A stretch of 64,000 bases of DNA, from positions 1-64,000 of the IMG/VR virus record IMGVR_UViG_3300044731_002337. One strand, 5' to 3'. Below, piece after piece: positions 13,001 to 63,097 of the stretch (position 1 is the stretch's first letter; each line of letters begins with the position of its first letter). The notes beneath the pieces were generated by a model. It ran no database searches. It was given only the letters and a program-made list of their open reading frames with translations, and was not told the origin of the DNA. The position numbers were made by a program, and so were the translations under genes.

Positions 13001-16000
13001 AGCACAATTATGTTTGGTCCCAGCATGTCTCTGTAATGCTTGTAGTATCTCGGTTTGATCAGGTCTGGGTTTCAATAGGTATACACGTTCCCAAAATGTA
13101 CGAATGGATTCATGGGGCGAAAAACGTCTCACGTAATGCTGGTCCCAATATGCAATCCAATCATCATAAATTAGACGTTGATCTATTGTATCTTTATTGA
13201 GATAATCCAACATAAATGACCCACTATATAGTAAAGGATTGATAGCGCTTACAACTTCATATACAAAGGGGCTATTTTCATTGAGGTTCATGGATAGAAC
13301 GGTGTATAGGGCAATCATATCTGTGACTGATATATTGATAAACCAGGAAAAGTCTGGTAAAAATTCAAGAATTGCAAAATGAGGGTCAATCACGATCTTG
13401 TCTCGAAGTGATGGGTCATGATGGCGATACATATCAAAACGTTTATGATGAAATAATCTGACTAATAATGCTCTTCTGTTTGGATTATCAGTGTGGAACA
13501 TGAGGCATACACTTGCAGTAGAATCATGACATGACCAGTGAAGTAGAGGATCTTTAATAACTTGATCATAATTCGTGTACCAACCATCATTTGGATTGTT
13601 GAGATGCCATCGATTCTGTATGCGGTACCAGGTATGGGAAGGAAGTTTCTGTTGTACGGAAATAAAACGAGCGGTAACTTGAGGTTCATTCGAAGAGGTA
13701 ACCTGTTGAGTAGATGTATCTTTAGTTTGAATCGAGTATCCATGTTCTCGCCATTGTGATGAATGCAAATCGAAGAATGTAATGAATTCACATACTGGTA
13801 ATGTCTTTTGATACATCCAATGTGATGTTATAGGATCCAAGGTGAGTTCAGGGTTTTCCATTGTAGTGATGGTTTGACCTGATGCTTTTATATGTAAATA
13901 GCGAAAGTGGCTGCTAGCATTACAATAGTTAATCAGTGGTTGGAATAATGTGGCGTCTTGACCTTGTAATGCGTAAATATAATAAATGAAGAGTTCTTTG
14001 TGAAAGGTTGGCGAGGTATTGAGAAATTGTTGGATGATCCAAGGTTCTGGATATTGTGGGTCTCGACATAATAGGAGGGCCAAATAATAATAGGCGAGAT
14101 TATCTTGTATATCAGGTCGAAATACGTGTTGAAGTTGTAATGTGACGCGGTAAGCTACACAGATGCCTAAATACAAGTGTAGATGTTCTGTAGGGATGGT
14201 GTGGTACTGGAGATGCCAAAAATGGTTACGTACCGTTTGGGCGTATTCGTCACGCTGTTGTAGGTTAAGTGTGGTGCAAGGTGAATGACGAAATGAAGTG
14301 ACAATGTCTCGAAATTGAATAGAGGCAAAAGAAAGATTACAGTTTAGGTTACCTTGAACGGGGATCATGATGGGTGATGTGGTAATGGTTTGGGATGGTT
14401 CCAATACAATAAAGTGTTGTATAAATTTGTCGAGCTCCTTCTTGTTTGTGGTGATGGGTTTATGTTTATGATTAATTTGGTTACGTAATTTAAAAGTAAT
14501 GAGTAAAGCGGTGAATGCATCAAGTTCAGAATGGAGTTGTAGTTTATGTTTCACGCTGAGTAGATCAGAAACCTTGGTTCGACTTTGAAAGAGTAGTTTG
14601 AGATATTGGTCTAAGGAGGCGCGTGATACCTTGGACACTACATAATTATACCATAGGAAGCCAAATGTATAATTAATCATACCGAAAATGTCAGTATTAA
14701 GATCTGGCTCGACAATGATTCTTCCTGTCAGGTAATAGGTGAGAAAACTGAACACATATGGAAATTGTTGTGCAGAAATGGTCTCTTTGGTTTGCCAGTA
14801 TAGACATGCTTCTTTACAATATTTAGCATCGATAATAAGTTTGAGATGATTATTGTATTGGTATGGCATTCGAGCGTGATTTAGCCATGGAAAGGTTTCA
14901 AATTCTTGGTTTGGAATCCAGTGAGTGTTGGTTGGAACAGTAAAGTATTCATATGCGGGATAAGAAGTATCTTTGGAATTGATATCATAATAATCAATGT
15001 GGAATGTACGAATTAATTTTTGATAAGTGTTTCGGTCGCATATTGCACCTTCTTTGCAGACGACATGTTGTAGAGCATGACCCATAGATAAGGTTTCGTT
15101 GGAGTCGATTTTGGTTGGTGCTTCGACATGTTTTTTCATGTAATTAAAAAAATCGGTAAAGTAGTGACAAACTTCTTGGAGGTGTTTTTGGTGTTGGGTG
15201 ATGAGCTGGTAGACGACATACCACAAGGTGCAATAAAAAGCGCATGTTCCTCCTAATTGGGGAGAGGCGTAAAGTCGACCTTCATGCCAGGTACATGCCA
15301 TTCTACCCATAGCATAGATGGTATAACGAGTTGGATGTTGTGGGATTTCAGGTGGAACGGTATGAAACTGTTGATACATTTCATCGGTATCATGGAATCG
15401 AATGGACTTGTCACCAGAAATGAGGAATTGTTTTAATTGGTCTTGAGATGGTTTGATGGGTTGTACAACATTGTACATGCCTTCAAGTTCATTATGGAAT
15501 TGTAATCCATCACCACTATTACATACAAACACTTGTTCACCAGGCCGAGTAAAGAGTATTGTTGCATGTCCAATCGTATTAAAAAGACGAACTGATGTAT
15601 ATGTTTCGTCTAATATATGGCAATAACTCTCGATAATTAGTTTATACATGTGCGGATCAGTACGATTAGCTAAAAAATGATAAGTCATCGCTCTGAGAAG
15701 ATCTTTGGTCATGATCTTGGTTTCACTGCCGTTACCATTTACCAATAAGTCTTGTAATGCAACTACATTCGCTAATTCTGATTGATTTAACAATAGACGG
15801 AATCGATTTAATGAGTCATACATTTCTTCGAGTGAAAGCAGCCATGGGAAATGTTCGGTAGGATGTACTTGGTATGCCCAAATATGTACCCCTAATTTGT
15901 TTACCTTTTTCATACTATGAAATTCTTTTATATCGTCATGAAGAATCAAGTTGGCGTAAGTAGTATCTACCATAACATTTACAAAGAATGGATTTTTCCA

Positions 16001-16027
16001 AAAGGTAATGGGGATATTATTTATCAT
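10034..16027 (-). CDS. ~2000-aa DUF3638/DUF3645-like protein: putative N-terminal Cys-peptidase plus SF2-like P-loop NTPase (paralogue 1)
   Basis: QLLMGMGKSSIIMP Walker A, IIDEYD Walker B, EQEQEREIEVENEV; N-terminal GHA..CNSG..QLGGTC. Confidence 0.75.
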   Translation of the reverse strand: MINNIPITFWKNPFFVNVMVDTTYANLILHDDIKEFHSMKKVNKLGVHIWAYQVHPTEHFPWLLSLEEMYDSLNRFRLLLNQSELANVVALQDLLVNGNGSETKIMTKDLLRAMTYHFLANRTDPHMYKLIIESYCHILDETYTSVRLFNTIGHATILFTRPGEQVFVCNSGDGLQFHNELEGMYNVVQPIKPSQDQLKQFLISGDKSIRFHDTDEMYQQFHTVPPEIPQHPTRYTIYAMGRMACTWHEGRLYASPQLGGTCAFYCTLWYVVYQLITQHQKHLQEVCHYFTDFFNYMKKHVEAPTKIDSNETLSMGHALQHVVCKEGAICDRNTYQKLIRTFHIDYYDINSKDTSYPAYEYFTVPTNTHWIPNQEFETFPWLNHARMPYQYNNHLKLIIDAKYCKEACLYWQTKETISAQQFPYVFSFLTYYLTGRIIVEPDLNTDIFGMINYTFGFLWYNYVVSKVSRASLDQYLKLLFQSRTKVSDLLSVKHKLQLHSELDAFTALLITFKLRNQINHKHKPITTNKKELDKFIQHFIVLEPSQTITTSPIMIPVQGNLNCNLSFASIQFRDIVTSFRHSPCTTLNLQQRDEYAQTVRNHFWHLQYHTIPTEHLHLYLGICVAYRVTLQLQHVFRPDIQDNLAYYYLALLLCRDPQYPEPWIIQQFLNTSPTFHKELFIYYIYALQGQDATLFQPLINYCNASSHFRYLHIKASGQTITTMENPELTLDPITSHWMYQKTLPVCEFITFFDLHSSQWREHGYSIQTKDTSTQQVTSSNEPQVTARFISVQQKLPSHTWYRIQNRWHLNNPNDGWYTNYDQVIKDPLLHWSCHDSTASVCLMFHTDNPNRRALLVRLFHHKRFDMYRHHDPSLRDKIVIDPHFAILEFLPDFSWFINISVTDMIALYTVLSMNLNENSPFVYEVVSAINPLLYSGSFMLDYLNKDTIDQRLIYDDWIAYWDQHYVRRFSPHESIRTFWERVYLLKPRPDQTEILQALQRHAGTKHNCAIQLLMGMGKSSIIMPYLIVDYLESIRHSPQLTTHGIYILVIQPRHLVKDALQKVMALQLIPWVIIRTGFHPAKLSRRPGFSIIHVVSDADLKRLYLLYKPGAFTPDMMIIDEYDSVCMPCKSDYNQVVKERLGYGPFKLSEKMMHWFQHILPEIIICHENYPHWDKDQLQYCDQGYEYLFQHWRHCIHTIEHEWLYRVKYGFRDHSLFIVPYIAMDVPHDTSEFTSNDVKYIGTCIALRHAKTLTHDQRQLLTRTISRRRDLELVAPHKNLLCAYVSECLFPKLCYTDIVKTISMVDILKQKQCITYAFSGTIAIPSSDELNITCVTGDSSYRHVVKLLQDQAPHIKPIQHIWPSIHHYDVFIDACGYCKQYTPSQVLDLLHKHTKRPIVYVDAKHTTKVYPNQHLYSITNNSNSFNNEDHHYFYYFDNAHIVGTDIKHPHSLRVLLMAHESMREYQVVQAMYRIRGIHLPEHKHSLHIVYELSSTQPKSNNQLPDQWHKLQQQDMETNRKYLKTQLIRYATKLKQGSYRVSLAHSTILDQEQEQEREIEVENEVQVDILYNPDQFVDNNYPYTQINSHGIINEQTGIDTPLGPHVFVSNYCQQFIRYNPAKWFDMFLLTHPQKMIIIHYDELYSLWGKLHPTLHRVFHAEGHLLYPHPSATESNHLLPCMLNLEKVTKQDLQHVITLIDSPKHFCKMVNKWLDARPVHDTILFRFQRFHGNKLSYTTTDILTRHADEMASTPSPKFIPHEHFDDHFDDNLDNSDLKSDDIPSPPYQPSPSSPSKTSTETEVEQEMILKTKTKKKKKTITYHRKNGRVVVNAKLQKLICQYVMHSLPEETTHVLTTIIQRMIHDTLITKYNLEQTNVYDYIDEEELYHSRKRRKKVEKLLSKYTDQLITHHMIRTVEQMFSTHSTCTRLTTAMKLAAGLLDDSLQKISHLVSHHFPNVDENTRREMGHYIITHSKSQFKRLSSQMIQKLHTKFIIHAK
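13673..13703 (-). repeat. Single in-frame unit of core family 1 inside the 1997-aa CDS
   Basis: GGTAAC-TTGAGGTTCATTCGAAGA-GGTAAC encodes VTSSNEPQVT; not present in the paralogue. Confidence 0.8.
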
Positions 16028-16045: not shown

Positions 16046-19000
16046 TTACATAAGAAAACTTTTGATTAGTTTTTGTTTCATAGTAGAACTGAGTCGAGAA
16101 AATAGACAACCACTTTTAGCATGCGTAACTACAAATTTGGCCATATTACGTTTTATGTTATCCTCCACATTGGGGAAATGATGAGAGACTAAATAGAAAG
16201 ATTTTTGTAATGAATCGTCTAGTAGTCCAGCTGCAAGTTTCATGGTGGTTGTTAGACGAGTAAATGTAGAGTGAGAGGAGAACATGTGTTCAATGGTACG
16301 AATCATGTGATGGGTAATAGGTTGATCTGTATATTTCTCTACAAGTTTTTTAACCTTTCTTCTTCGTTTTCGACTTTGAACTAATTCTTCTTCGTCAATG
16401 TATCCATACACATTGGTTTGGTCAAGATTGTATTTGGTCAGTGTAAGATCATGACTCATGTTATGGATGAGTATAGTCGTGACTCGAATAGTTTCTTCAG
16501 GTAGACATTCCAAAACATATTTTCGGATACGTTTTTGCATGGATGGACTGACGACAAGTTGACCGTCAATGCGATGAACTTTGGGTATTCTGGATTTGGG
16601 AATAGTATAGTAATGAGTCAAGTCTGGTTCTGGTTCAGTTTTGGATGATGATGAGGAAGAATTTATAATGATTGGTGAGGCTTTACTTACAATGGGTGGT
16701 ATCATTGTCATGGCAACTTGCGGTAATGTAATTGGTGCTTCCGCTGGTGGTGGTGGTGGTGGTGAAGCAGGTTTGAGGATAGAGGATGATGGATAGATGT
16801 ATTTATGAGTATACTCTTTTGATGTTTGGGAAATGGTATAAAAAAGTCGTTTTCGATCGGCATTCGATGAAAAGAGTATGGTGTGGCTTAAAGGGCGAGA
16901 CATATGACATAGACTTTCCATGTTTTTGAATTCGGAAGGAACAGAAATTTGTTTGGCAATTTCAGTGAGGTGTGTAGAGGTTACACTGGATAAATAAAGC
17001 ATTGTGGCAATCATGGGGTGAAAGGCTTTAGTTGACGCGGTTGGATAGATAAGATGACCTGTAGCATGAAATACCTTGTGTTTGTTAGGTAATAGTTTGC
17101 CCCATAATGTATATAATTCATCATAATGGATAATAATTGATTTAGGATAATGCTCAAGGATAAATAGATCATACCATGTTATATAATTTTCACGAACAAA
17201 TTCTTTACAATATTTGGAAAGAAAAGTATGGGGACCAAATGAAATTTCGTTGGATGAAGCATTGTAGTTGATACGCCCTTGATTATCAATATGGGTATGA
17301 TTTTGGCGAATAACACGTTTGATAGTTAGTTTTACATGATAGGTATCTATTTCTACTTCATTTTCAACTTCTTTTTCATTTTCCTTTTCCTGTTCCAATT
17401 CAAGCATAGATGCTGGTTGATCATTACAATCCTCATGCATTATTTGATAAGACTTTTTAGCAATTTTCTTGTCATTCCTTAGTAGTAATATGTCTAAATA
17501 TTTGGCGTTAGTTTGTATATCTCTGTGTTGAGCATCTCTCCAAATGGTGACTAATGAGTTGTTGGGGGTTAACGATTCGTAAGCGAAAGTAATATCATGT
17601 TCGTTAGTGGGTACATCAATACCTCGAATGCGATACATGGCTTGTACGACTTGATATTCTCGTAATGATTCATGTGTCATGAGTAGAATGCGTAGTTTTC
17701 GAGGATGTTTTATGTCTGTACCTACAATGTGGGTATGATCAAAGAAGTAAAAATATGATTTGGACATATCAAACGTATTCGAGGTTCTGGTTTCAGAATA
17801 CACATGATTTTCTGGGTACACCATAGTAATGTGTTGTGAATTAACATAGACGATAGAGCATTTCACGTGTTCATGAAGCAATTCAATGATTTCCTGTTGT
17901 GAGTGATCTTTGCAATAGCCGCACGCATCAATAAAGACGTTGTAATGTTTGAGGTCAGCCCATAGATTCGTCTTGGGTGAAATGCATCTCATCTTGTGTC
18001 GGTTAGATTCGAGAATGTGTATTACTTTGGAGTAGGATTGATCCTTGGTGACGCAGGTGACATTTAATTGAGGGCTGGAAGGGATGGCTACAGTACCGGA
18101 GAAAGCATAGACGATACCGTGTTTTTGTCGTAATATATCTACCATGGTAATATTATTGACAATGGTACTGTAATGGAGTTGTGGGAATAAACATTCGGAT
18201 GCGTAGGTGCATAAGGGATTATTCTTGTCATCACTAGGTTGAATAATGCGTAATTTGAGGCGTCGATGAGTGGTTGCTTTGAGTAGTCGTTGTTGTTCTC
18301 GAGTGAGGTGACCTTCATGTCGTAGAGCCATACAGGTAGCAATGAAATTGACATCATTGGACGAAAATTCAGAGGATTCATGTGGTATGTCCATGGCAAT
18401 ATAAGGGACAACAAATAAGGAAGCTTTAGGTCCCGTATGTCGAAATCCATACTTGACTCGATAAATCCATTGATGATGAATCGTATGTACACATGTTTTC
18501 CAATGGGTAAATAATCGTTCTTGACCTGGATCACAATATTCGGATTGTTCTGTATCCAGTAAATCATATCGTTGGGTCATGATGATTTGGGGTAATCGAT
18601 GTTGAAACCAATGTAACATTTTGGGGGAAAGTGATGTATTACAACTATAGCCTCTTTGTTCTGCTACCACTTCATTATAGTCTGATTTACAAGGCATACA
18701 GATGCTATCATATTCATCGATGATCATCATATCAGGAATGAATTCATTGGGTTTTAATTTGAGATAGAGTCTCTTGAGATCGGTATCGCTTACTACGTGT
18801 ATGACAACATGGGATTTACGTCGAGTTAAGAGTTGGTCGGTGATGCCATAACGAACAATGACCCAAGGAATAAAGTTGAATGTAATAATTTTCTGTAGGG
18901 CGTCTTTGGTTAGGTGGCGAGGTTGAACGACTACAATGTATAGGCCTTGTTGATGCAGTTGTGGTAATGTGGTGGCATTTTGTAAATAGTTGACGAGTAG

Positions 19001-22000
19001 ATAGGGCATGATGATGGATGATTTTCCCATGCCCATGAGGAGTTGAATTACGCAATTGGGTCCTTTGGCTGCACCTTTCTCTAGTGCTTCTATTACATCC
19101 TTTTGGGCTGGTGTTGGAGTGAGGGGATATATACGCCCCCAAAAAGAGGAAACTGTATCTCGGGGTGTAAAAAGGCGTATATAATGTGTATCCCAATAGG
19201 TAATCCAGTCTTGTGGTAATATTCTCTTTGGGGAGTCCTTATTCAAGTAGTCGATCATGTAGGAGCCGCCATACATAAGTGGATCATAAGCAGAGGCAAC
19301 TTCATAAACTCGATTAGCATTAATGTTATGGTTTTCGGCGAGAATACGGTAAAGAACAACTATGTCCGTGATGGATAAGTCCTTAAACCATGTGTAATCT
19401 GAAGTAAATTCAATGATACCAAAATAAGGGTCAGTATGGATTTGGGATCGATAGGTTTCGTTTTGGTGTATATAGGAATCGTGACAATAGGAGTTGGTAT
19501 AATAGAGTAACAAGCCTCTTCTGGAAGGGTGGCTGGTATGATACATGAGACATATGGATGCGGCTTCAGCGTGACATGACCAGTGTAGTAAAGGATCAGA
19601 AATGACTTGAGAATAGTTGGTGAACCATCCTTCAGTGGGGTGATGTAAATGCCATTGTTGAGGTGTCACACTATACCAATTATGAGAAGGAATGCTTGGA
19701 GTAGTGGATCTATATCTCACAATACTGACATTATTTTTTTGGGTTCTTATCATGTATCCATACTTACAAAAGGGATCTTCTGGGAAACGAAAGAAGCTAT
19801 TTAATGGTTCGACTTTATCCCCATCATAGAACCATGTTCGAGTATTTTTGACTAATTGGAGAAGTGGTTCCTCAACCGTCGAGGTAGCGTCAGACGTCAT
19901 ATGTAGTTTTCGAAAAGCTGAGCTACATGAACACTGTTGCCATAATAATGTGATGGAGGATGATTTGCGAGTAGCATACAAATAGTATAAATAAATCTCT
20001 TGGGACTTGTTACGTGGGAGTGTTAAACGAATAAACTGGTCCATTATCCATTCTTCTGTATATTGTTTATCATCTCGACATAAAAGTAATGCTAGATAAT
20101 AATAGGGCAATGTAGAAAGAGGCAATTGCTTGTGTAGATTAGGGATGAGTACGTTGGATAATTGTAGTGTGACATTATAGGCTATACAGATACCCATATA
20201 AAGGTGGAGGTTGGATTCAGGGATATCATGAAATTTTAGATATTCAAAATGGTGACGAACACAGGACATTTCGATATCTTGTTGTTCTTTGGGTAGTAAC
20301 ACAACTTGACCGAATTCTATGCTTACCATTTTGGTGTTAAACTTCATGTCACCATATACGGGTATCAGTAAAGGAGAGAATTCAGTAACTTGTGTCGTCG
20401 GTGAAGCTTTATATTGGGACAGTAGTTTGCCAATGTCTTCATTTTTCACTAGAGGAGGAATAAACATATTGTTATAGCCTAATTGTTGATGTAACTTGCC
20501 AGCAATAACGAATGTGGCAAAAGTATCATGGTACAATTTTAGTTGTAACTTAACTGATGCATCGATAATATCTTCTTTGTTGACATCATTCCTCAAAATA
20601 TCACTTATGATATTGGTAACGAGAACAGTCCCCACTTTTGAGGTAATGTAATTATGCCACAGGCTACCGAAAGTGAGGTGTAACATTCTGAATAAGTCCG
20701 CCTGATGTGAACTAAGGGCCATAGCCATACTCGTGCAAAAATAACGTAAAAAACGCAACACTAAAGGAAATTGGGTGTCTGTAATCATCGATTTAGATTG
20801 CCAATGATGACATGCTTGTTTCACATATAATCCATTCATCAGTAATCGTAAGTCAGCTCCCATTCGTAATCTGGAATCTTCATGGTGAAACAGCCATGCA
20901 AATGTTTCGAATTCATTTGTTTGATCCCAGATTTGATCAAGACCTAACTTGGGATCTTCCCTAATTAAGTAATCTGTCTTGGTCAAGTTATGTCCATATA
21001 TCCTTCTATGATAATCGAGAACTAGCTTGTCATAGGTTTTATCACATTGTCGATTCTCTTTGCATAGTACATGTTGTAATGTGTACCCTTTGGAAGCAAT
21101 TGGGGTAGAAACAACTTGAATGGGTGATGCAACATGTTGTCTCATGTATTTTAAAAATTCCTCTATATACAACCCAATTTTTACTGCGCCGTGTTGACTG
21201 GTAGTAAGTAAACGGTATACGAGCAACCACACATTACAATAAAACGTACATGTGCCACCCAACTGTGGACTAGCATAAAGACATTGAGCGTCTTGATGAT
21301 AAGAGAAAATCATACGCGACATGCTGTACACGGTATATTTCTTAGTGGTAGCTGGTGGTGGTGGGGATACTAAATTAAGTTGTTCATAAATATCATCTAC
21401 TCTAGAAAAACTTATGGTTTTGGTGTTTTTACGTACAAGTGACATGAATTCATGATCTGGAATAATTTCTTGAATGACATTGTACATAGACTCGAAAGTA
21501 GCATGATTTTGTAGTCCACTTCCACTATTACTAATAAACCATTTCCTATTTTTCTCATCATGGAATAACAGCATAGCATGACCAGATGAATTCAATTCTC
21601 GTACTTTCATTTCATTAGGGTCCAATACTTCCAATAAGAATAACATAATATGAAAATACATTTGATGATCTGTATCTGCTTCATTTCCTCCCATCATCCC
21701 AAAGTCATGTAAATGGCGCATTGTCATGGCGTGAATCAATTCTTTGGCCATGCGTGCAGTTGTACTTCCGACATTAGGTTTGATTAATTCCTCCATAGCA
21801 ACAATATGGGCTAATTCGGAATCATTAAGTCGCAATTTATAGTTATCAATTCTTTTGATAATCTCTTTTTCAGAAATTTGCCAGGGAAGTCGTTTCTTAG
21901 GGTAATGTAGATGAGCCCATACAAATAATAGTAATGGAGTTTGTTCATTTGTTTTATAAACTTCTAGACTTGAAAGATCATGGCGTAATACATTCATTGC

Positions 22001-22060
22001 TATAGTTTCCATGAATATTTCCAAAAACTGTAAATTTCTCCATAATGCTTTTGGGATCAT
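16046..22060 (-). CDS. ~2000-aa DUF3638/DUF3645-like protein (tandem paralogue 2)
   Basis: Colinear with 10034..16027 along its whole length: GHA..SNSG..QLGGTC, QLLMGMGKSSIIMP, IIDEYD, shared C-terminal domain. Confidence 0.75.
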   Translation of the reverse strand: MIPKALWRNLQFLEIFMETIAMNVLRHDLSSLEVYKTNEQTPLLLFVWAHLHYPKKRLPWQISEKEIIKRIDNYKLRLNDSELAHIVAMEELIKPNVGSTTARMAKELIHAMTMRHLHDFGMMGGNEADTDHQMYFHIMLFLLEVLDPNEMKVRELNSSGHAMLLFHDEKNRKWFISNSGSGLQNHATFESMYNVIQEIIPDHEFMSLVRKNTKTISFSRVDDIYEQLNLVSPPPPATTKKYTVYSMSRMIFSYHQDAQCLYASPQLGGTCTFYCNVWLLVYRLLTTSQHGAVKIGLYIEEFLKYMRQHVASPIQVVSTPIASKGYTLQHVLCKENRQCDKTYDKLVLDYHRRIYGHNLTKTDYLIREDPKLGLDQIWDQTNEFETFAWLFHHEDSRLRMGADLRLLMNGLYVKQACHHWQSKSMITDTQFPLVLRFLRYFCTSMAMALSSHQADLFRMLHLTFGSLWHNYITSKVGTVLVTNIISDILRNDVNKEDIIDASVKLQLKLYHDTFATFVIAGKLHQQLGYNNMFIPPLVKNEDIGKLLSQYKASPTTQVTEFSPLLIPVYGDMKFNTKMVSIEFGQVVLLPKEQQDIEMSCVRHHFEYLKFHDIPESNLHLYMGICIAYNVTLQLSNVLIPNLHKQLPLSTLPYYYLALLLCRDDKQYTEEWIMDQFIRLTLPRNKSQEIYLYYLYATRKSSSITLLWQQCSCSSAFRKLHMTSDATSTVEEPLLQLVKNTRTWFYDGDKVEPLNSFFRFPEDPFCKYGYMIRTQKNNVSIVRYRSTTPSIPSHNWYSVTPQQWHLHHPTEGWFTNYSQVISDPLLHWSCHAEAASICLMYHTSHPSRRGLLLYYTNSYCHDSYIHQNETYRSQIHTDPYFGIIEFTSDYTWFKDLSITDIVVLYRILAENHNINANRVYEVASAYDPLMYGGSYMIDYLNKDSPKRILPQDWITYWDTHYIRLFTPRDTVSSFWGRIYPLTPTPAQKDVIEALEKGAAKGPNCVIQLLMGMGKSSIIMPYLLVNYLQNATTLPQLHQQGLYIVVVQPRHLTKDALQKIITFNFIPWVIVRYGITDQLLTRRKSHVVIHVVSDTDLKRLYLKLKPNEFIPDMMIIDEYDSICMPCKSDYNEVVAEQRGYSCNTSLSPKMLHWFQHRLPQIIMTQRYDLLDTEQSEYCDPGQERLFTHWKTCVHTIHHQWIYRVKYGFRHTGPKASLFVVPYIAMDIPHESSEFSSNDVNFIATCMALRHEGHLTREQQRLLKATTHRRLKLRIIQPSDDKNNPLCTYASECLFPQLHYSTIVNNITMVDILRQKHGIVYAFSGTVAIPSSPQLNVTCVTKDQSYSKVIHILESNRHKMRCISPKTNLWADLKHYNVFIDACGYCKDHSQQEIIELLHEHVKCSIVYVNSQHITMVYPENHVYSETRTSNTFDMSKSYFYFFDHTHIVGTDIKHPRKLRILLMTHESLREYQVVQAMYRIRGIDVPTNEHDITFAYESLTPNNSLVTIWRDAQHRDIQTNAKYLDILLLRNDKKIAKKSYQIMHEDCNDQPASMLELEQEKENEKEVENEVEIDTYHVKLTIKRVIRQNHTHIDNQGRINYNASSNEISFGPHTFLSKYCKEFVRENYITWYDLFILEHYPKSIIIHYDELYTLWGKLLPNKHKVFHATGHLIYPTASTKAFHPMIATMLYLSSVTSTHLTEIAKQISVPSEFKNMESLCHMSRPLSHTILFSSNADRKRLFYTISQTSKEYTHKYIYPSSSILKPASPPPPPPAEAPITLPQVAMTMIPPIVSKASPIIINSSSSSSKTEPEPDLTHYYTIPKSRIPKVHRIDGQLVVSPSMQKRIRKYVLECLPEETIRVTTILIHNMSHDLTLTKYNLDQTNVYGYIDEEELVQSRKRRRKVKKLVEKYTDQPITHHMIRTIEHMFSSHSTFTRLTTTMKLAAGLLDDSLQKSFYLVSHHFPNVEDNIKRNMAKFVVTHAKSGCLFSRLSSTMKQKLIKSFLM

Positions 22061-24074: not shown

Positions 24075-25023
24075 ATGGCTTCTGAGGAAATGACTGGTTT
24101 GCTTTCTTTACCATGTGATGGAGTTCATCATAAGGAGGATGTGTTACGCAATGTGCCGTCTGACGTGTATTTGGACATGGATGACATTAAGGGGTATATG
24201 GAGGGTGAAACACGTGAGTGGCCGTGCAAGGAATGTCTCTGCGCCATGATTGAGCGATTACATCCGTAAGTAGAGATTATTGGTATGTGTATTCACTTGG
24301 CATGGTTAGGCGTGATGAGAAATATCGAAACATGTTTTTCTATGAGCGTTGGCTTTCTGGGATATTCCATCAGATCAAATTTTTGAATTTTAGTATGAAG
24401 CAAATGTATCAAAGCTTTGTGAACCGTGGAGACATTTACTTGACATACGATGTACGAAAAAAGCTTGCGAATGGAATAGGATCAAAACTCTGTGGTGACA
24501 AGCATGTACCCGAGAAGACGATGCTACTACAACGACTTGATATGCCGCCTGAAGACATTCGTGATGACAACAAGTGCAAGGAATGTCTCGAGTACTTTTT
24601 CAAGGAAAATCTCACGTAAGAATAGTTTTTTTTTTATTTCCTATTGATACCATGATTTATGGTAGATCATGGGCCTTGTTGCAACAGTATTGTGAGGAGG
24701 GTCGATTTGCGATGGCGGTCAAGTTGGTATCGTTTACACCAAGCAATCGATTGAAGCTGAACCAATTTCCAACGAGTGTACTCAATGTTCCACATGAAGC
24801 GATGGCGAATTCTGCTTTTCACCAGATTCGGTGGCTGATCCTTCATGGGAAACATCTTGGTATTCATGATTGTGAGTTTTGCAAGACTGAAGCCAGCATC
24901 AATTATGATCCGGACAATGAGGAGGATGAGGAGGAGGAAGAAGAAGAAGAAGAAAAAAGTTGCCTAGGAAAGAGAAAACATGAAGACGTGTTTCCATGCA
25001 TGGATGTTGTGAGTAATAAATAG
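24075..25023 (+). CDS. Spliced three-exon Cys/His (putative Zn-binding) module protein, join(24075..24265,24310..24615,24666..25023), 284 aa
   Basis: Introns of 44 nt (GTAAGT..TTAG) and 50 nt (GTAAGA..GTAG), both phase 2, restore one frame across three ORF-track fragments. Confidence 0.85.
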
Positions 25024-39690: not shown

Positions 39691-39704
39691 AAAATTTTCA
39701 AAAG

Positions 39705-39777
39705 TACACAAGACGAGACTCGAACTCGTGACTTTTGGCTCATAAGACCAACACTCTACCAACTGAGCTACTTGTGT
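39705..39777 (-). tRNA. tRNA-Ile (anticodon UAU), intronless
   Basis: 73-nt cloverleaf: acceptor ACACAAG/CTTGTGT, TAGCTCAGTTGGTAGA, anticodon arm TTGGT-CTTATGA-GCCAA, GTTCGAGTC; T-runs downstream. Confidence 0.95.
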
Positions 39778-51254: not shown

Positions 51255-51814
51255 ATGGATGTGTGTAAGTTTTATGCGGTCAAGAGTGAATTGGAAAGTG
51301 TGGTGACGGATTGGGAAGCGATAAGGCGGATTCTTGTAAGGTCACCTTTAGCTGAAACGATTTGGAAGAAACAATTGTTTTTGGGGGCAATAAGGACGTG
51401 TTGTGATCATTCTGTCACTCAATATGAAGTCATGCCTTTATTGGCTACTCATATTACGGAAGAAGAGTTTGAATCCATTACTAGCACTTGTCCTTGGTGT
51501 TTCAAAATGGCAATTCAATGGCTATATGAGTAAGTTGTTGTGGAAAAAAAACATAGAAATGATTCTAATTTTTTTTTTTATGAAATAGACCTGAAAGAGT
51601 ATTGGAGAGTATGATTACAAAAGAACGTTATGACTTGGCATTGCTCATCTTGAAGCATACGACATTTCACTTGGATTGTCACTTTGTCATGACGCATTTT
51701 CAAAAACATCCTTATCCCAATAAGCAAGGGCTATTAGTATTGCATCAATGTATATTACGTTTCAAGATTCCAGAAGAAGAGGAAGAGGAAGAGGAGGAGG
51801 AGGAAGAAGAATGA
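51255..51814 (+). CDS. Spliced two-exon Cys/His module protein, join(51255..51529,51589..51814), 166 aa
   Basis: 59-nt phase-2 intron GTAAGT..CTAAT..ATAG; exon 2 PERVLESMITKERYDLAL matches exon 3 of the 24075 and 44196 genes. Confidence 0.8.
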
Positions 51815-57599: not shown

Positions 57600-60500
57600 T
57601 TATGTAATATTATGTCGAGTTAGCTTTTCTTCTGCGATGGCGAGCCGTGATTGTACAGCGGATAGAGTAGTAGATAGTTCTTGTATGGCTTTGATCATGG
57701 GGGAGATAAATTCGGTGTAGGAGAGACTATAGGAATCTTTTTCAGGGTCGTATGAAATTCCAGCAAAGTCATTCAAAGACAATCCACTATTAGTAACGGT
57801 GGATTGGACTTGTTGGGCTAGTAAACCATAGTTGGTCTTGGTATAAGTGTGATGTATAGTCTCTGTGTTGTTGTTAGCATCTGGTGGTCCCTCGACATTA
57901 TAATCTTTGAATTTATAGCTTACAGGTCGTAGTGCATTGATAAAACTTAGCCCAAGTGGTGAATCAGTAATATTCTCTTTTAACCTTTCATCAGAGCTTT
58001 GGTATACTGTTTCACAATAAATTTGTTTGAATTGAAGTCCTGATAATCCAATGTTAGACGTATTATTGGACAAGGGGAGAATGTTAACACCTACATACAT
58101 ATATCCTATATAAGAATCCAAGTATCTATTGGAGGGAGCACCTAAACGATAGGTATTTGTCGCTAGTGGATATAAGCTACGAGTATTCATATCCCCAGTA
58201 CTAGTGGTAGTAAATACAAAACCAGCAAAACTGCCACCATTTCTTCCGCCAGTAGAGTTATCACAATAAAGATAAGGTGTATATTGACCGCCACCATTAT
58301 CAAGCCCAAATTCCATAAAACTTTTACCACTGGTATGAATAACTACATTGGTTTTCACATTCGGGTCTGTTCCCGGAGAATATACATTGAGAGAACCTTG
58401 GCCACCAGTAACGGATAACGAGCCTGTTACACTTGTACTACCCGAATTCGTGACAGAAAATCTTTCCACGGCAGACGAATCTTGCACCGCCATCTTACCA
58501 TTAGTACCCAATACAGAGATATCATTCATGGGTGTAATTGGACCACCATTTGATTTGGATAGACGTATATTCCTTATATCATGAGTGGTACTAGCCCCAC
58601 CAGTGAATGACCCAAACCCATAATAATCATTAGCTTGTGATAATGTTCGACGAGTATCAGTAAAAGGGTAGAATCCTGGAACCGCCCATTCATTGATGGT
58701 GATCCAAAACTGATTGATACAGAATACTATTTTAATTCGCATCCATGAATTACTAGATAGTCCAGCATTAGAACTACTAGTGGATAAATTGGTTGTCGCT
58801 AATAAAAGACTGGGGCTACCACCATTCCAATATAGATTTAATTCATCGTCTTGATATTCATCAATTACTACAGAGTAACCGCCACAGTTTGCTGTATTAG
58901 CAGTGAGGTTAGTAGGTACGCTGCTATTGTTAAAAAAGAACCAAGTAGCATCAGCTCCAGCAATATTACCAATCATTAACTCAAATTCCATCGTAAATGA
59001 ATTTCCTGGATGCCCTCTATACACCAATTGACCTTGTTGGTTCTGCAAGTTAGGGGTTAATTGCACGTAACCAGATTGTTTAGAAGCTGATCCTTGTACA
59101 TATCCTCCTCTTAAGGTTGATCCGGCACCTAAACCGTCTTCCATTTGAATAACACTATTGTACGCACTAGGGTTCAAAATCGTTCCCATGGCCGAATTAT
59201 CAGAGGGAGTAATATTCAAGGAACCGGTAGACAAGGTAATGTATCCATTGGAATTGTTATGGTACTGTAACATTTCATTTGATGTACCATATGAACACCT
59301 ATTTCCCAACATGGATAAATATCGATTTGTACCATCCAAGCGAAATACGGTAGTGATGACAGAGGAAGCCCCTTCTGATTGGAAATCAATATTTCGCCCT
59401 AACCCTGATACCATACAATTGGTAGTTGAACCATCATGAAACATCCACAAATCACTACTATCACCTAAACTTAATCTCACATTATCAAAACACTTGACTC
59501 CATTCTGGGTTAATGAACATCTTGTAATTGTGGAATCAGTCAACAATAAGCTATTGGATCCCAACACAAACCTCATATCACATGAATTCAAAGTTACGGT
59601 AGTCAAACCAGATCCAGCTGAAATACTCGATCTGGTGTTAGAACTTTCTTTAAAGGTAATACCAGACACACTACATGCTCCATTACTATCTCTGGTTATA
59701 ATAGTAGATACCGTATTATCAGAAGAGACAGCAGCCAATTTTGCAGTAGTTATCGTACCATCCGTAATGTCTGCATTCACAATCAACGATGTACTACATT
59801 CACCTGATCCATTCGAAGCGGTATGCACTACCCCAGCAGAGCTAAGACTTGAAACGGTCAATGCATTTGTTATTAAAGTACCCGAAATGGTATCCCCAGT
59901 TTTCAATACATTTAACGAAGCCGCTCCTGTCAGACTGGCGGTAATCGTTCCAGCAGAGAAATTACCAGAAGAGTCTCGAACAACGAGGTGACTGGCGGTA
60001 TTACTGGAGGATACAGCAGCTAGTTTTGCATTGGTAATCGTAGCATCAGTAATGTCAACGTTATCAATGAGGGAGGAGGAAAAAACACCAGATGTGAGGT
60101 GAGCAATGCCTGTACTAGATGAGCCGGATAGTGTTAGACCAGTAAATGTTGGCGAATCAGTTTCAGCAAGATCTTGGGGAAGACCACCTGCAGGACCTGA
60201 AGTGATCACACCATTACTTGCAATTGATAATGAACCACTTGAAAGTCCAGTGAGAGTTAATCCTGCAAATGTAGGTGAAGCTCCAGTATGAATGTTTTGA
60301 GGTAATGATAAGGTAATGTGTCCTGTAGTAGCAGATACTAGCACTTGATTACTAGTTTGAGTGAGAGATAAGACGCCATCATTGGTAATCGCATCAGAGG
60401 TGAGACTTATACCCGTACCCACATTTAGTTTAGCAGTTAAGGTAGCTTGGGTTGTCGCGTTAGAGAGATAGGATAATGCACTTGTGACATCTGTAGCACC

Positions 60501-60902
60501 AATATAGAGATTATTCGTATATGTAGTATTGAATCGTTTGGTAAGTGACCCTATATTAATGGTATTGGTAGTGGAAGGTACAAGGGTTGCAGTATCTTCT
60601 AGTGTGATGGTACCACTTGCATTTATAGCTGTAGTGTGAAAAGTTGTCCATCGATGGGTTGAATCGCCAAGAGCAACAGACGAATTAGGTAGGAGACCAT
60701 CAGATTGAATTCCTAGATTCCAAATTCGTAGTTCACCAGCACTATCGCGTAGAGTTCCAGAGCAATTGGTAAAGGATAAAGTACCATCAACCTCTGTGTT
60801 GTTTCTAATCTGAATGATAGAACCTGTAGACGAAAGACTTGGAGTAAAGATGCCATCAGATCCTACTCTGACTTCGGTTTGTGACATGCGAGAATTAGAC
60901 AT
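57600..60902 (-). CDS. Tail-fibre-like protein with lectin-like (ConA-type) insert and C-terminal peptidase S74 chaperone
   Basis: DITDATITNAKLA and ASLNVLKTGDTISG shaft motifs; VQLTPNLQNQQGQL..GADATWFF lectin-like segment; SSDERLKENI..LRPVSYKF..GLLAQQV..SYTEFISPMIKAIQEL. Confidence 0.85.
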   Translation of the reverse strand: MSNSRMSQTEVRVGSDGIFTPSLSSTGSIIQIRNNTEVDGTLSFTNCSGTLRDSAGELRIWNLGIQSDGLLPNSSVALGDSTHRWTTFHTTAINASGTITLEDTATLVPSTTNTINIGSLTKRFNTTYTNNLYIGATDVTSALSYLSNATTQATLTAKLNVGTGISLTSDAITNDGVLSLTQTSNQVLVSATTGHITLSLPQNIHTGASPTFAGLTLTGLSSGSLSIASNGVITSGPAGGLPQDLAETDSPTFTGLTLSGSSSTGIAHLTSGVFSSSLIDNVDITDATITNAKLAAVSSSNTASHLVVRDSSGNFSAGTITASLTGAASLNVLKTGDTISGTLITNALTVSSLSSAGVVHTASNGSGECSTSLIVNADITDGTITTAKLAAVSSDNTVSTIITRDSNGACSVSGITFKESSNTRSSISAGSGLTTVTLNSCDMRFVLGSNSLLLTDSTITRCSLTQNGVKCFDNVRLSLGDSSDLWMFHDGSTTNCMVSGLGRNIDFQSEGASSVITTVFRLDGTNRYLSMLGNRCSYGTSNEMLQYHNNSNGYITLSTGSLNITPSDNSAMGTILNPSAYNSVIQMEDGLGAGSTLRGGYVQGSASKQSGYVQLTPNLQNQQGQLVYRGHPGNSFTMEFELMIGNIAGADATWFFFNNSSVPTNLTANTANCGGYSVVIDEYQDDELNLYWNGGSPSLLLATTNLSTSSSNAGLSSNSWMRIKIVFCINQFWITINEWAVPGFYPFTDTRRTLSQANDYYGFGSFTGGASTTHDIRNIRLSKSNGGPITPMNDISVLGTNGKMAVQDSSAVERFSVTNSGSTSVTGSLSVTGGQGSLNVYSPGTDPNVKTNVVIHTSGKSFMEFGLDNGGGQYTPYLYCDNSTGGRNGGSFAGFVFTTTSTGDMNTRSLYPLATNTYRLGAPSNRYLDSYIGYMYVGVNILPLSNNTSNIGLSGLQFKQIYCETVYQSSDERLKENITDSPLGLSFINALRPVSYKFKDYNVEGPPDANNNTETIHHTYTKTNYGLLAQQVQSTVTNSGLSLNDFAGISYDPEKDSYSLSYTEFISPMIKAIQELSTTLSAVQSRLAIAEEKLTRHNIT

Positions 60903-60937: not shown

Positions 60938-61862
60938 TTATTCTTGGTTTGGAAACGAGGAAGAATGGAGTTTACGAAAAGTCTCCTTGTATTTAGGTAA
61001 CCCACCATTTGCTTCAGTATATTCAAACAAGGCCTCAGCTTCGATATCTGAACTGGGAAGATCAATTTCCATAGGATCCATCCATTCTTTAAATTGCATA
61101 TTGATAATGCATTGCCTCATGTCCCCATTAGTTTGGGCGATTAGGTGATCAAGGTCCAAGTCCACCTTTTCTTGTAGGGCAATGAATTGAAGCCGTTGCT
61201 TAATGTGATCATGTCGTAATGGTGCAAATCGAAAGGCCAAACATCTGGATTTGATGGGGTCAATGATCTTGTGTAGATAATTCACGATGAAAATAAAACG
61301 ACAATTCTTCACGTAGGTTTCCATAACTCGTCGTAACAAGAGTTGAGCATCTGATGACAATCCATCCGCTTCATCAAGTATCACTAGTTTAAGACCTTGG
61401 CTACAAATAAAAATAAAACCAAAGTATTAAACATAAATAATCACCCATCAAAGTGGGGTCTTGAAGAAGCAAAAGGTACAACCCTTTGACGCATAATATC
61501 AATTCCATTTTCATCTGAAGCATTAATCTATTGCCAGGTAAGTGTTGATAGCAAAAGAAGAAAAAAAAATACCTCTAGTGTTTCGACAAAATGTTTGGAA
61601 ATAATGTGGGCTGCTGAGGTTTTTCCTATTCCATTCGAGGTGAATAGGGGCGATTACGAATATGGAGAACAACCTGTGCCTGGAGGACCATGGAGGAGCA
61701 TGTGTGGAATATTACCTTTTTCAATCATGCGAGTAACTAGATATAGGTGTATAAAAAAAAACATATGAACATGAATTTACTTGCATGTATGATATCATCT
61801 TGTGAGACCATATCTGAAAAAGTCTTGGGTCGATAAACTTCGGTCCAAAGTCGACAATCCAT
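60938..61862 (-). CDS. RFC: Replication factor C small subunit, complement(join(60938..61400,61445..61527,61573..61625,61674..61736,61781..61862)), 247 aa
   Basis: Four introns (44, 48, 45, 44 nt) restore LWTEVYRPKTF, HMLLHGPPGTGKTS, LEINASDENGID, KLVILDEAD, SRC. Confidence 0.93.
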
Positions 61863-62040
61863 GGGTTTATTAGTATTTTTACCCCGAAAATTGCCCGATC
61901 GGAGGATTAACCCGTAAGTCGGGATAAAAGATTGGGTCGATTCTCGGGCTTGAGTTGGGAATGATGTAGAAAGTCGAAAGTCGGACTTGACATGAATCCC
62001 GGATTTCGGACTAGATGTAAATCCCGGATTTCGGGCTGGA

Positions 62041-62860: not shown

Positions 62861-63097
62861 ATGTCGGGAATGCAAATTTTTGTCAAGACGTTAACTGGGA
62901 AAACCATTACATTGGATGTGGATTCAGCGGATACTGTTGCATCGATAAAGCAAAAAATTCAAGATAAGGAAGGGATTCCACCTGACCAACAGAGATTGAT
63001 ATTTGCAGGGAAACAATTGGAAGATGAACGTACTCTTGCCGATTACAATATTCAGAAGGAGTCGACTCTCCATCTAGTATTACGTTTACGAGGCTAA
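62861..63097 (+). CDS. Ubiquitin ending at Gly75 (LRLRG*), with a short MSG leader
   Basis: Near-canonical ubiquitin sequence; codons CGT TTA CGA GGC TAA. Confidence 0.95.

What the first reader, a model, noticed from the sequence alone, without database searches (positions are those of the whole stretch)
60938..61862. RFC small subunit interrupted by four micro-introns, one inside Walker A
Introns of 44, 48, 45 and 44 nt lie in the first ~95 codons, and one splits GPPGTG|KT. This is the strongest single proof of splicing in the window, because universally conserved motifs appear only after intron removal. Intron positions could show whether the gene came from a host with its introns or gained them in the virus.
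Basis: seen in the sequence. Interest (0 to 1): 0.6.

Follow-up and report, generated by a model that had tools for sequence, protein, structure and literature searches.

The report
Viral RFC5 gene keeps host introns
A giant-virus-like genome from a freshwater lake carries a shortened clamp-loader (RFC5-type) gene cut by four tiny introns that sit at the same places as ancient introns of the eukaryotic RFC5 gene, so the virus most likely took the gene from a host as genomic DNA and still depends on host splicing to express it.

Summary
On the minus strand, ATG 61862 to stop 60938 carries four GT..TAG introns of 44, 48, 45 and 44 nt. Removing them gives a 744-nt CDS (247 aa) with every RFC ATPase motif, and intron 2 splits the last Gly codon of GPPGTGKT.

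- **Splicing (comparative evidence only, no RNA data).** A 98.6% variant differs at 12/184 intron columns but at 1/744 exon positions, and that one change is synonymous. Three diverged orthologues read straight through the sites of introns 1, 2 and 4. dN/dS in the spliced frame is 0.12-0.22.
- **Origin of the introns.** All four introns, plus a fifth found only in the relatives, lie at the same nucleotide offset and phase as introns of eukaryotic RFC5 orthologues (Capsaspora, Umbelopsis, Branchiostoma, sea urchin, Selaginella). Chance probability is about 1e-8 to 1e-10. The gene was therefore captured from a eukaryote with its introns, and the viral lineages differ by intron loss, not gain.
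- **Truncation.** Homology to RFC5 stops exactly at another ancestral exon boundary. The collar domain is replaced by a conserved tail of about 50 aa.

Spliceosomal introns in giant viruses are already known. Host-inherited intron positions, four per gene and only 44-48 nt long, appear to be new. The virus's taxonomy, its host and the protein's function remain unresolved.

The parts
61781..61862 (-). Exon 1 (82 nt): ATG, MDCRLWTEVYRP (RFC box II) ... IIHA, ends in phase 1
   Evidence: model. RFC5 HMM positions 13-35 hit this ORF fragment.
61737..61780 (-). Intron 1, 44 nt, GTAAAT...CTAG, 23% GC, phase 1. It lies 47 nt upstream of Walker A.
   Evidence: The same offset and phase occur in Capsaspora, Selaginella, Umbelopsis, S. 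purpuratus, Branchiostoma and Mucor RFC5 genes. There is a 1-nt deletion in its poly-T tract in variant L002. It is absent from orthologues L003, L008 and L020.
61674..61736 (-). Exon 2 (63 nt): ITRMIEKGNIPHMLLHGPPGT + first base of Gly
   Evidence: HMM positions 35-58.
61626..61673 (-). Intron 2, 48 nt, GTTGTT...ATAG, phase 1, inside Walker A (16 nt after the start of GPPGTGKT)
   Evidence: Same offset and phase as a Capsaspora RFC5 intron. Variant L002 has 8 substitutions and a 3-nt insertion here, with GT and AG kept. Absent from L003, L008 and L020.
61573..61625 (-). Exon 3 (53 nt): (G)KTSAAHIISKHFVETLE
   Evidence: The only exon difference in L002 is GGA to GGG, which is synonymous in this frame.
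61528..61572 (-). Intron 3, 45 nt, GTATTT...ATAG, phase 0, one codon before NASD (RFC box IV). CTTAC branch-like motif with its A 12 nt before the 3' end.
   Evidence: Shared with viral orthologues L003 (55 nt), L008 (40 nt) and L020 (46 nt), and with Capsaspora, Umbelopsis, sea urchin and Branchiostoma RFC5.
61445..61527 (-). Exon 4 (83 nt): INASDENGIDIMRQRVVPFASSRPHFD + two bases of Gly
   Evidence: HMM positions 82-107.
61401..61444 (-). Intron 4, 44 nt, GTGATT...GTAG, 18% GC, phase 2, 25 nt before DEAD (Walker B)
   Evidence: Same offset and phase in Umbelopsis and Branchiostoma; Capsaspora is one codon away and Selaginella five codons away, both in the same phase. Absent from L003, L008 and L020.
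60938..61400 (-). Exon 5 (463 nt including the stop). It carries Walker B ILDEAD, sensor-1 Asn, the SRC arginine finger and sensor-2 GDMR. A 51-aa tail follows (FKEWMD...ALFEYTEANGG...), which is not homologous to the RFC collar.
   Evidence: Tail against the RFC5 family: hhalign P = 0.13, no match. The tail motif A(L/M)(F/L)EYxxAxG is conserved in the four viral orthologues.
57600..60902 (-). Downstream neighbour: an 1100-aa fibre-like protein with a Peptidase_S74 chaperone domain. It starts 36 nt after the RFC stop, so no room is left for further RFC exons.
   Evidence: It is syntenic behind the RFC gene in L003, L008 and L020.

Best explanation
The locus is a functional, virus-encoded, truncated copy of the eukaryotic RFC5-type clamp-loader subunit (human RFC5, yeast Rfc3). 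An ancestor of this group of uncultivated freshwater giant viruses took it from a eukaryote as genomic DNA, that is, with its introns. The ancestral viral gene carried at least five of the donor's introns: Walker A -47, Walker A +16, NASD -3, DEAD -25 and DEAD +49. The window's lineage kept the first four and lost the fifth. The sister lineage (L008, L003, L020) kept the third and fifth and lost the other three. The retained introns are 40-55 nt long, except one of 238 nt that is filled by a tandem repeat. The pre-mRNA must be spliced by the host's major (GT-AG) spliceosome, which implies nuclear or spliceosome-accessible transcription. The product is a 247-aa AAA+ module (ATPase and lid domains) with an intact P-loop, Walker B, sensor 1, SRC arginine finger and sensor 2. 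The collar domain is replaced by a conserved tail of about 50 aa. Shown: the anatomy, the homology, the intron-position identity, purifying selection, and gene order shared with the three related contigs. Inferred: actual splicing, the direction and mode of capture, and the order of losses. Most speculative: because the trans-acting arginine finger is kept, the protein probably still works inside a multi-subunit AAA+ ring with host or other viral RFC subunits during viral DNA replication, rather than alone.
For: - **Gene model.** Exact exon/intron model and motifs. A collinear RFC5-HMM hit on every exon fragment long enough to be scanned (exons 1, 2, 4 and 5). hhalign E = 2.5e-69.
- **Population variant L002.** 12/184 intron columns differ against 1/744 exon positions (Fisher p = 3e-8). 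Intron 1 has a 1-nt indel and intron 2 a 3-nt indel, all GT/AG sites are kept, and the single exon change is synonymous.
- **Orthologues L003, L008, L020.** They are continuous ORFs across the sites of introns 1, 2 and 4, which defines those exon junctions to the base. They share intron 3 and have an extra intron at LRR|VME.
- **Selection.** dN/dS is 0.115 (L003 against L020) to 0.22 in the spliced frame.
- **Intron positions.** Alignment-independent offsets to the Walker A, NASD, DEAD and GDMR anchors are identical in nucleotide and phase to introns of RFC5 orthologues. Those exon models reproduce the annotated proteins exactly. Chance probability is 3e-8 to 9e-10.
- **Phylogeny.** The four viral proteins form one clade (SH-aLRT 100) inside the group that holds all named RFC5 orthologues, apart from the RFC2/4 clade and the archaeal-type RFCS sequences.
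- **Truncation.** Homology ends at Capsaspora residue 230, which is exactly its phase-0 intron site GDMR +33.
- **Viral context.** IMG/VR contig; gene-dense; many ORFans, ankyrin, RING, kinase and Peptidase_S74 fibre genes. The fibre gene downstream is conserved in all relatives.
Against: - No RNA evidence: no spliced 247-aa product or junction read was found in any searchable collection.
- Placement inside the RFC5 group has only moderate support (SH-aLRT 82). An intronless, probably viral RFC (P0129, next to a family B DNA polymerase) is the weakly supported sister (84).
- The Walker A intron is shared with only one of six sampled eukaryotes (Capsaspora).
- Intron 4 lies in a length-variable stretch. 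It matches Umbelopsis and Branchiostoma exactly but is 3 nt away from Capsaspora's site.
- Without the collar domain, which holds all known clamp loaders together, a classical clamp-loader role is uncertain.
- The virus was not classified, and an endogenous (integrated) state cannot be excluded.
Confidence: 0.85

Rival explanations
1. The introns were gained inside the viral lineage, for example by introner-like elements or insertion at proto-splice sites. Under this view their coincidence with eukaryotic RFC5 intron sites is convergent.
For: Intron presence differs between viral lineages: three are unique to the window and one is unique to the relatives. Intron gain, including by introners, is documented in mirusviruses (PMC12768974). 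The Walker A site is shared with only one of six eukaryotes.
Against: All five distinct viral positions coincide in nucleotide offset and phase with RFC5 introns; chance is 1e-8 to 1e-10. Four of the five sites are present in three or more distant eukaryotes, so they are old. The introns show no similarity to each other by eye.
Confidence: 0.05
2. The window is not a free virus. It is an endogenous giant-virus element or another part of a eukaryotic genome, and the gene is a decaying or host-domesticated RFC5 fragment.
For: Introns in nucleocytovirus genes are typical of endogenised elements (PMC12768974, discussion). The gene is truncated. No hallmark virion or replication gene was seen in the 74 kb inspected.
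Against: dN/dS is 0.12-0.22 and all catalytic motifs are intact in four lineages. The truncation and the tail are conserved, so they are not decay. Near-identical contigs of 295-299 kb were assembled from several Lake Mendota samples, with no eukaryotic flank seen. Gene density is viral. Integration would not change the conclusion about the origin of the introns.
Confidence: 0.08
3. The segments are not spliced. The locus is a pseudogene, or it is expressed only as the last-exon ORF (148 aa from a GTG/ATG-like start), as automatic annotation has called it.
For: Public gene calls list only the 148-aa ORF (P0001 and P0003). There is no transcript evidence.
Against: Exons 1-4 are conserved at the protein level in four lineages and give collinear RFC5-HMM hits. 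Variation concentrates in the introns. GT..AG sites are conserved. A lid-only fragment would lack the P-loop.
Confidence: 0.02

Closest known systems
Eukaryotic RFC5 (human nomenclature; Rfc3 in yeast), PDB 6vvo_C, 9uiq_C, 7sgz_C
   Same: It has the AAA+ ATPase and lid domains with RFC boxes II-VIII. These include the P-loop GPPGTGKT, Walker B DEAD, the sensor-1 Asn, the SRC arginine finger and the GDMR sensor 2. Identity is about 45% over 192 residues. Five intron positions and phases are identical to those of RFC5 genes.
   Different: It is 247 aa instead of 320-350. There is no N-terminal extension and no C-terminal collar domain (Rep_fac_C), which is replaced by an unrelated 51-aa tail. 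The introns are 44-48 nt, against 50-1100 nt in the sampled eukaryotes.
RFC small subunits of Nucleocytoviricota (Mimiviridae-type; here L007 from GVMAG-M-3300012936-38, and P0129 next to a family B DNA polymerase)
   Same: They are virus-encoded RFC small-subunit homologues, presumably serving viral DNA replication.
   Different: The two inspected are uninterrupted ORFs. P0129 is of cellular length (321 aa); L007's full length was not determined. They are only 32-34% identical to the window protein (L007). The window's family is spliced and lacks the collar.
Spliceosomal introns of pandoraviruses, chloroviruses and mirusviruses
   Same: They are GT-AG introns in viral protein-coding genes that must be removed by the host spliceosome, which implies a nuclear phase (PMC5995976, PMC12768974).
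   Different: Pandoravirus genes average about 1.2 introns. Mirusvirus introns peak at about 80 bp and are enriched in virion genes, where they must be gains. Here one small gene has four introns of 44-48 nt, at positions inherited from the cellular donor gene.
Host-gene capture by poxviruses through LINE-1 retrotransposition
   Same: A cellular gene is transferred horizontally into a large DNA virus.
   Different: That route goes through spliced mRNA and yields intronless copies (PMC9578705, PMC9578709). The retained ancestral introns here point to capture of genomic DNA.

Membership tests
RFC small subunit / clamp-loader AAA+ ATPase (RFC2-5, archaeal RFCS) | N-terminal RFC box II (xWxEKYRP) | tested here: met
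   LWTEVYRP in exon 1. It aligns to PWVEKYRP of RFC5.
RFC small subunit / clamp-loader AAA+ ATPase (RFC2-5, archaeal RFCS) | Walker A GPPGTGKT and Walker B hhhhDEAD | tested here: met
   GPPGTGKT appears only after removal of intron 2. ILDEAD is in exon 5.
RFC small subunit / clamp-loader AAA+ ATPase (RFC2-5, archaeal RFCS) | Sensor-1 Asn, SRC arginine finger, sensor-2 GDxR | tested here: met
   FIFIVNY, KSRC and GDMRQ are conserved in all four viral orthologues.
RFC small subunit / clamp-loader AAA+ ATPase (RFC2-5, archaeal RFCS) | C-terminal helical collar domain (Pfam Rep_fac_C, PF08542) that assembles the pentamer | tested here: not met
   There is no Rep_fac_C hit. Matches to solved structures end at residue 101-119 of the 153-aa last-exon piece. 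The hhalign local alignment ends at RFC5 residue 230 of 348. The tail against the RFC5 family gives P = 0.13. No collar-like ORF is found anywhere in the window or the next 10 kb.
RFC5 orthologous group (as opposed to RFC2, RFC3, RFC4 or archaeal RFCS) | Groups with RFC5 orthologues in a tree and in sequence searches | tested here: inconclusive
   The best PDB hit is human RFC5, but archaeal RFCS is almost equal (7e-23 against 9e-23). The tree places the viral clade in the RFC5 group with SH-aLRT 82 and apart from the RFC2/4 clade (96).
RFC5 orthologous group (as opposed to RFC2, RFC3, RFC4 or archaeal RFCS) | Shares RFC5 gene structure (intron positions and phases) | tested here: met
   Five of five viral positions equal RFC5 intron sites. 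Intron positions of the paralogues RFC2, RFC3 and RFC4 were not examined, so specificity to RFC5 is not shown.
Spliceosomal (U2-type) introns | GT...AG termini | tested here: met
   All four window introns are GT..TAG. The six introns of the relatives are GT..AG. The termini are conserved in variant L002.
Spliceosomal (U2-type) introns | Branch-point-like motif and pyrimidine-rich 3' part | tested here: inconclusive
   By eye, CTTAC (intron 3), TTCAC (intron 2), and CTCAC, CTAAC, TTAAC or ATAAC in the relatives, with the branch A 10-12 nt (relatives, intron 3) or 16 nt (intron 2) before the 3' end. T-runs occur in introns 1, 3 and 4. No statistical test was done.
Spliceosomal (U2-type) introns | Removal from the transcript in vivo | not testable with these tools
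   No transcript data were reachable. No protein of spliced length is present in the protein collections.
Nucleocytoviricota (giant virus) genome | Hallmark genes (major capsid protein, family B DNA polymerase, A32 ATPase, VLTF3, D5 primase-helicase) | tested here: inconclusive
   None was found in the 64-kb window or the next 10 kb. This is the terminal quarter of a 295-kb contig; the rest could not be read.

The most novel reading that the evidence does not exclude
This uncultivated freshwater virus lineage obligately uses the host spliceosome. It has kept host-derived introns in a replication gene through long divergence (synonymous sites are saturated between lineages) because splicing itself is selected, for example for nuclear export or expression timing. 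The introns have been shrunk to the host's minimal spliceable length (about 40-50 nt), which would make intron length a predictor of the host. The collar-less RFC5 would act by inserting its AAA+ module into the host clamp loader, or competing with it, rather than forming a viral clamp loader. The truncation at an exon boundary would record capture or recombination inside an intron.
Probability: 0.25. Interest if true: 0.8.

Novelty: new variant of a known kind. Interest (0 to 1): 0.68.

Why it matters
How large DNA viruses acquire cellular genes is documented experimentally mainly for poxviruses, where capture goes through spliced mRNA and gives intronless copies. Here the gene structure itself records the route. 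Five intron positions shared with animals, fungi, a filasterean and a plant show that a multi-exon piece of a host replication gene entered a viral genome as DNA. They also show that its introns stayed functional while the virus diversified.

This gives three things:
- a clear marker that this virus group transcribes in reach of the host spliceosome;
- a natural series of intron loss and miniaturisation in a fast-evolving genome;
- a warning that prokaryote-style gene calling misses such genes, since public records list only a 148-aa fragment.

The conserved collar-less RFC5 also raises a testable question about how a virus uses a clamp-loader subunit that cannot join the pentamer in the usual way.

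Tried and rejected
1. **Gains in the window lineage.** After finding that relatives lack introns 1, 2 and 4, I first read them as gains in the window's lineage. Mapping eukaryotic RFC5 gene structures overturned this in favour of differential loss.
2. **Tail as a relic of the collar.** MAFFT placed the tail motif FEYxxAxG on IEYRLxxG of the RFC5 last exon. hhalign of the four tails against about 100 RFC5 sequences gave no support (P = 0.13, aligned elsewhere), so this was rejected.
3. **Separately encoded or trans-spliced collar.** No RFC5-profile hit beyond HMM position 213 was found in six frames of the window or the next 10 kb. No GT donor follows the boundary codon in any of the four genes (read).
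4. **Taxonomy.** Pfam scans of about 55 ORFs, a UDG homologue search and a 10-kb walk along the IMG/VR contig found no hallmark gene or named viral relative. The order is unresolved.
5. **More family members.** An exhaustive HMMER search of 1.84 billion representatives found only P0001 and P0077 carrying the tail. IMG/VR holds only the window's own contig.
6. **Lingula RFC5 gene model.** It could not be built because only two exons matched the fetched locus, so it was dropped.
7. **Rfam.** Only one tRNA was found; there is no self-splicing intron or snRNA.
8. **Structure and complex prediction.** Not run.

Full report
**Observation.** The gene lies on the minus strand. Reading 61920 to 60900 and rebuilding the model in a script gives an ATG at 61862 and five exons: 61862-61781, 61736-61674, 61625-61573, 61527-61445 and 61400-60938. 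The four introns are 44, 48, 45 and 44 nt (61780-61737, 61673-61626, 61572-61528, 61444-61401). Each starts GT and ends TAG, they are 18-44% G+C, and their phases are 1, 1, 0 and 2. The spliced CDS is 744 nt (247 aa). Intron 2 lies after the first base of the last Gly codon of GPPGTGKT.

The spliced product carries the RFC boxes in order: LWTEVYRP, GPPGTGKT, INASDENGID, ILDEAD, the sensor-1 Asn, KSRC and GDMRQ. An RFC5 profile HMM run against all six-frame ORF fragments of the window hits the exon fragments collinearly at HMM positions 13-35, 35-58, 82-107 and 106-213. It finds nothing else RFC-like in the window.

**Context.** The window is identical to positions 1-64000 of IMGVR_UViG_3300044731_002337, a 294,773-bp contig. 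A near-identical 299,086-bp contig lies in IMG 3300059473. That entry is the 20-year Lake Mendota co-assembly used to recover giant-virus MAGs; the paper describing it does not mention introns.

The window is gene-dense, about 37% G+C, and mostly ORFans. Recognisable genes are ankyrin, RING and kinase genes, UDG, an ExoIII-type nuclease, an RNA ligase, ubiquitin, two tandem 2000-aa paralogues, Peptidase_S74 fibre-like proteins and one tRNA. No hallmark gene was found in the window or the next 10 kb, so the order is unresolved. The gene repertoire is of the giant-virus type.

**Evidence that the segments are introns.**
- *A 98.6% variant.* L002 is a 1.8-kb contig from another Lake Mendota-series sample. 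It differs from the window at 12 of 184 intron columns but at 1 of 744 exon positions (Fisher p = 3e-8). Intron 1 has a 1-nt deletion in its T-run. Intron 2 has eight substitutions and a 3-nt insertion. All GT and AG termini are kept. The single exon change (GGA to GGG) is synonymous in the spliced frame.
- *Three diverged orthologues.* An exhaustive HMMER search of 1.84 billion representatives with the last exon found only one other cluster sharing the unusual C-terminal tail (P0077). Its contigs (L003-L005) and two metagenome contigs (L008, L020) carry orthologues 49-58% identical to the window protein. In all three, the reading frame runs uninterrupted across the sites of window introns 1, 2 and 4, which defines those exon junctions to the base. 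All three have an intron exactly at the site of window intron 3 (..LE|LNASD, phase 0). All three also have a further intron at LRR|VME (phase 1) that the window lacks.
- *Selection.* dN/dS in the spliced frame is 0.115 for the closest pair and about 0.2 for the others.
- *Synteny.* In every relative the fibre-like gene follows the RFC gene, and a Peptidase_S74 gene precedes it on the other strand. The four genes are therefore orthologues in a stable viral neighbourhood.

**Where the introns came from.** I fetched the genomic loci of named RFC5 orthologues: Capsaspora, Selaginella, Umbelopsis, Strongylocentrotus, Stentor, Branchiostoma and Mucor. I derived exon models that reproduce each annotated protein exactly. 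On a joint alignment, and independently as nucleotide offsets from invariant motifs, every viral intron coincides in position and phase with RFC5 introns:

| Viral intron | Offset from motif | Phase | Eukaryotic RFC5 genes with the same site |
|---|---|---|---|
| Window intron 1 | Walker A -47 | 1 | All six intron-bearing species |
| Window intron 2 | Walker A +16 | 1 | Capsaspora |
| Window intron 3 | NASD -3 | 0 | Capsaspora, Umbelopsis, sea urchin, Branchiostoma |
| Window intron 4 | DEAD -25 | 2 | Umbelopsis, Branchiostoma (Capsaspora one codon away, Selaginella five codons away, same phase, in a length-variable loop) |
| Relatives' extra intron | DEAD +49 | 1 | Five species |

With 9-11 eukaryotic sites among 576 possible positions, the chance of four out of four is about 3-7e-8, and of five out of five about 2-9e-10.

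The four viral proteins form one clade (SH-aLRT 100). That clade sits inside the group holding all named RFC5 orthologues, with modest support (82), and apart from the RFC2/4 clade and the archaeal-type sequences. The simplest reading is a single capture of an intron-bearing RFC5 gene as DNA, followed by differential intron loss. The window lineage lost DEAD +49. The L008/L003/L020 lineage lost Walker A -47, Walker A +16 and DEAD -25. All four lack the ancestral GDMR -49 intron.

**Truncation.** The profile-profile alignment of the viral family to RFC5 ends at Capsaspora residue 230. That residue is exactly the phase-0 intron site GDMR +33 found in Capsaspora, Selaginella, sea urchin and Branchiostoma. 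Beyond it, the viral proteins carry a 49-62-aa tail with a conserved A(L/M)(F/L)EYxxAxG motif. The tail has no detectable similarity to the collar domain.

The next gene starts 36 nt after the stop. No collar-like ORF exists nearby, and no GT donor follows the boundary codon. The family is therefore a collar-less RFC5: it fails one defining feature of RFC small subunits while keeping every ATPase motif, including the trans-acting SRC arginine finger. The coincidence of the truncation with an exon boundary suggests that capture or a later recombination ended inside an intron. That step is inference.

**Mechanism.**
- *Shown:* the gene structure, its homology to RFC5, introns at ancestral host positions, purifying selection, and gene order shared with the three related contigs.
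- *Inferred with high confidence:* the pre-mRNA is spliced by the host major spliceosome, so transcription occurs where spliceosomes are available.
- *Inferred with moderate to low confidence:* the product acts with other clamp-loader subunits (host or viral) in viral DNA replication. A decoy or regulatory role is equally open.

**Comparison with what is known.** Spliceosomal introns are documented in pandoraviruses (7.5-13% of genes, about 1.2 per gene; PMC5995976), in chloroviruses, and abundantly in mirusviruses (length peak about 80 bp, enriched in virion genes, dynamic gain and loss; PMC12768974). They are otherwise regarded as a sign of endogenised nucleocytovirus elements. Poxviruses capture host genes through LINE-1 retrotransposition of spliced mRNA (PMC9578705, PMC9578709).

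My literature searches found no report of a giant-virus gene whose introns sit at the donor gene's ancestral positions, nor of an intron-bearing viral RFC. Absence from this library is not proof of novelty. I rate the finding a new variant of a known kind.

**Limits.**
- There are no transcript data.
- The virus is unclassified and its host is unknown.
- RFC2, RFC3 and RFC4 gene structures were not examined.
- Only seven eukaryotes were sampled, and five of them are opisthokonts.
- The Walker A intron is shared with only one eukaryote.
- The tree is a quick search with moderate support.

Noticed in passing
window 24075-25023 (+) and 44196-43226 (-): Two paralogous Cys-rich genes (motifs PCDG, CxxC...L(H/D)P). 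Each is interrupted by two micro-introns: 24266-24309 and 24616-24665 in one, 43849-43809 and 43508-43467 in the other, 41-50 nt long. The introns fall at the same alignment columns and the same phase (2), so the introns predate the duplication.
   Followed up: partly
window 51530-51588 (+), 29001-28960 (-), 23842-23785 (-), 62406-62355 and 62190-62143 (-): Further candidate GT..TAG micro-introns of 42-59 nt, AT-rich and often with T-runs. Each joins open reading frames; one lies within an ankyrin-repeat gene. Micro-introns appear to be a genome-wide feature. None was verified by homology.
   Followed up: partly
window 1-64000: GC skew on the + strand is strongly positive (mostly +0.1 to +0.35) across almost the whole window, although genes lie on both strands. 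This points to a strand-wide mutational or replication asymmetry rather than a coding effect.
   Followed up: no
window 10034-16027 and 16046-22060 (-): Two adjacent paralogous ORFs of 1997 and 2004 aa with weak DUF3638/DUF3645 (P-loop) matches.
   Followed up: no
window 39704-39777 (-): A single tRNA-Ile with anticodon UAU. It is the only Rfam hit in the window.
   Followed up: no
window 61981-62030 (+ coordinates), upstream of the RFC start: A 25-nt tandem duplication containing AATCCCGGATTTCGG twice. It is G+C-richer than its surroundings and found nowhere else in the window.
   Followed up: partly
L008 1190-1427: In this relative, the intron at LRR|VME has grown to 238 nt and is filled with a short tandem repeat (..TTTCGGTCATGTTCCCTACGGTCAAC..). 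Its orthologues in L003 and L020 are 41 and 46 nt.
   Followed up: no
window 62861-63097 (+): An intronless ubiquitin gene with a three-residue N-terminal extension ([10 protein letters not shown]...) lies about 1 kb upstream of the RFC gene. A PARG-domain gene lies beyond it on the 299-kb contig.
   Followed up: no
window 60938-61384 (-); public proteins P0001, P0003: Public annotation (JGI, NCBI) calls only the last exon, as a 148-aa protein from a GTG start. The full gene is absent from the protein collections, an example of how prokaryote-style gene calling hides spliced viral genes.
   Followed up: yes
L093 5001-8930: The nearest non-family neighbour in the tree (P0129, 321 aa) is an intronless RFC small subunit lying directly upstream of a family B DNA polymerase on a gene-dense 14-kb contig. 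It is probably another giant virus.
   Followed up: partly
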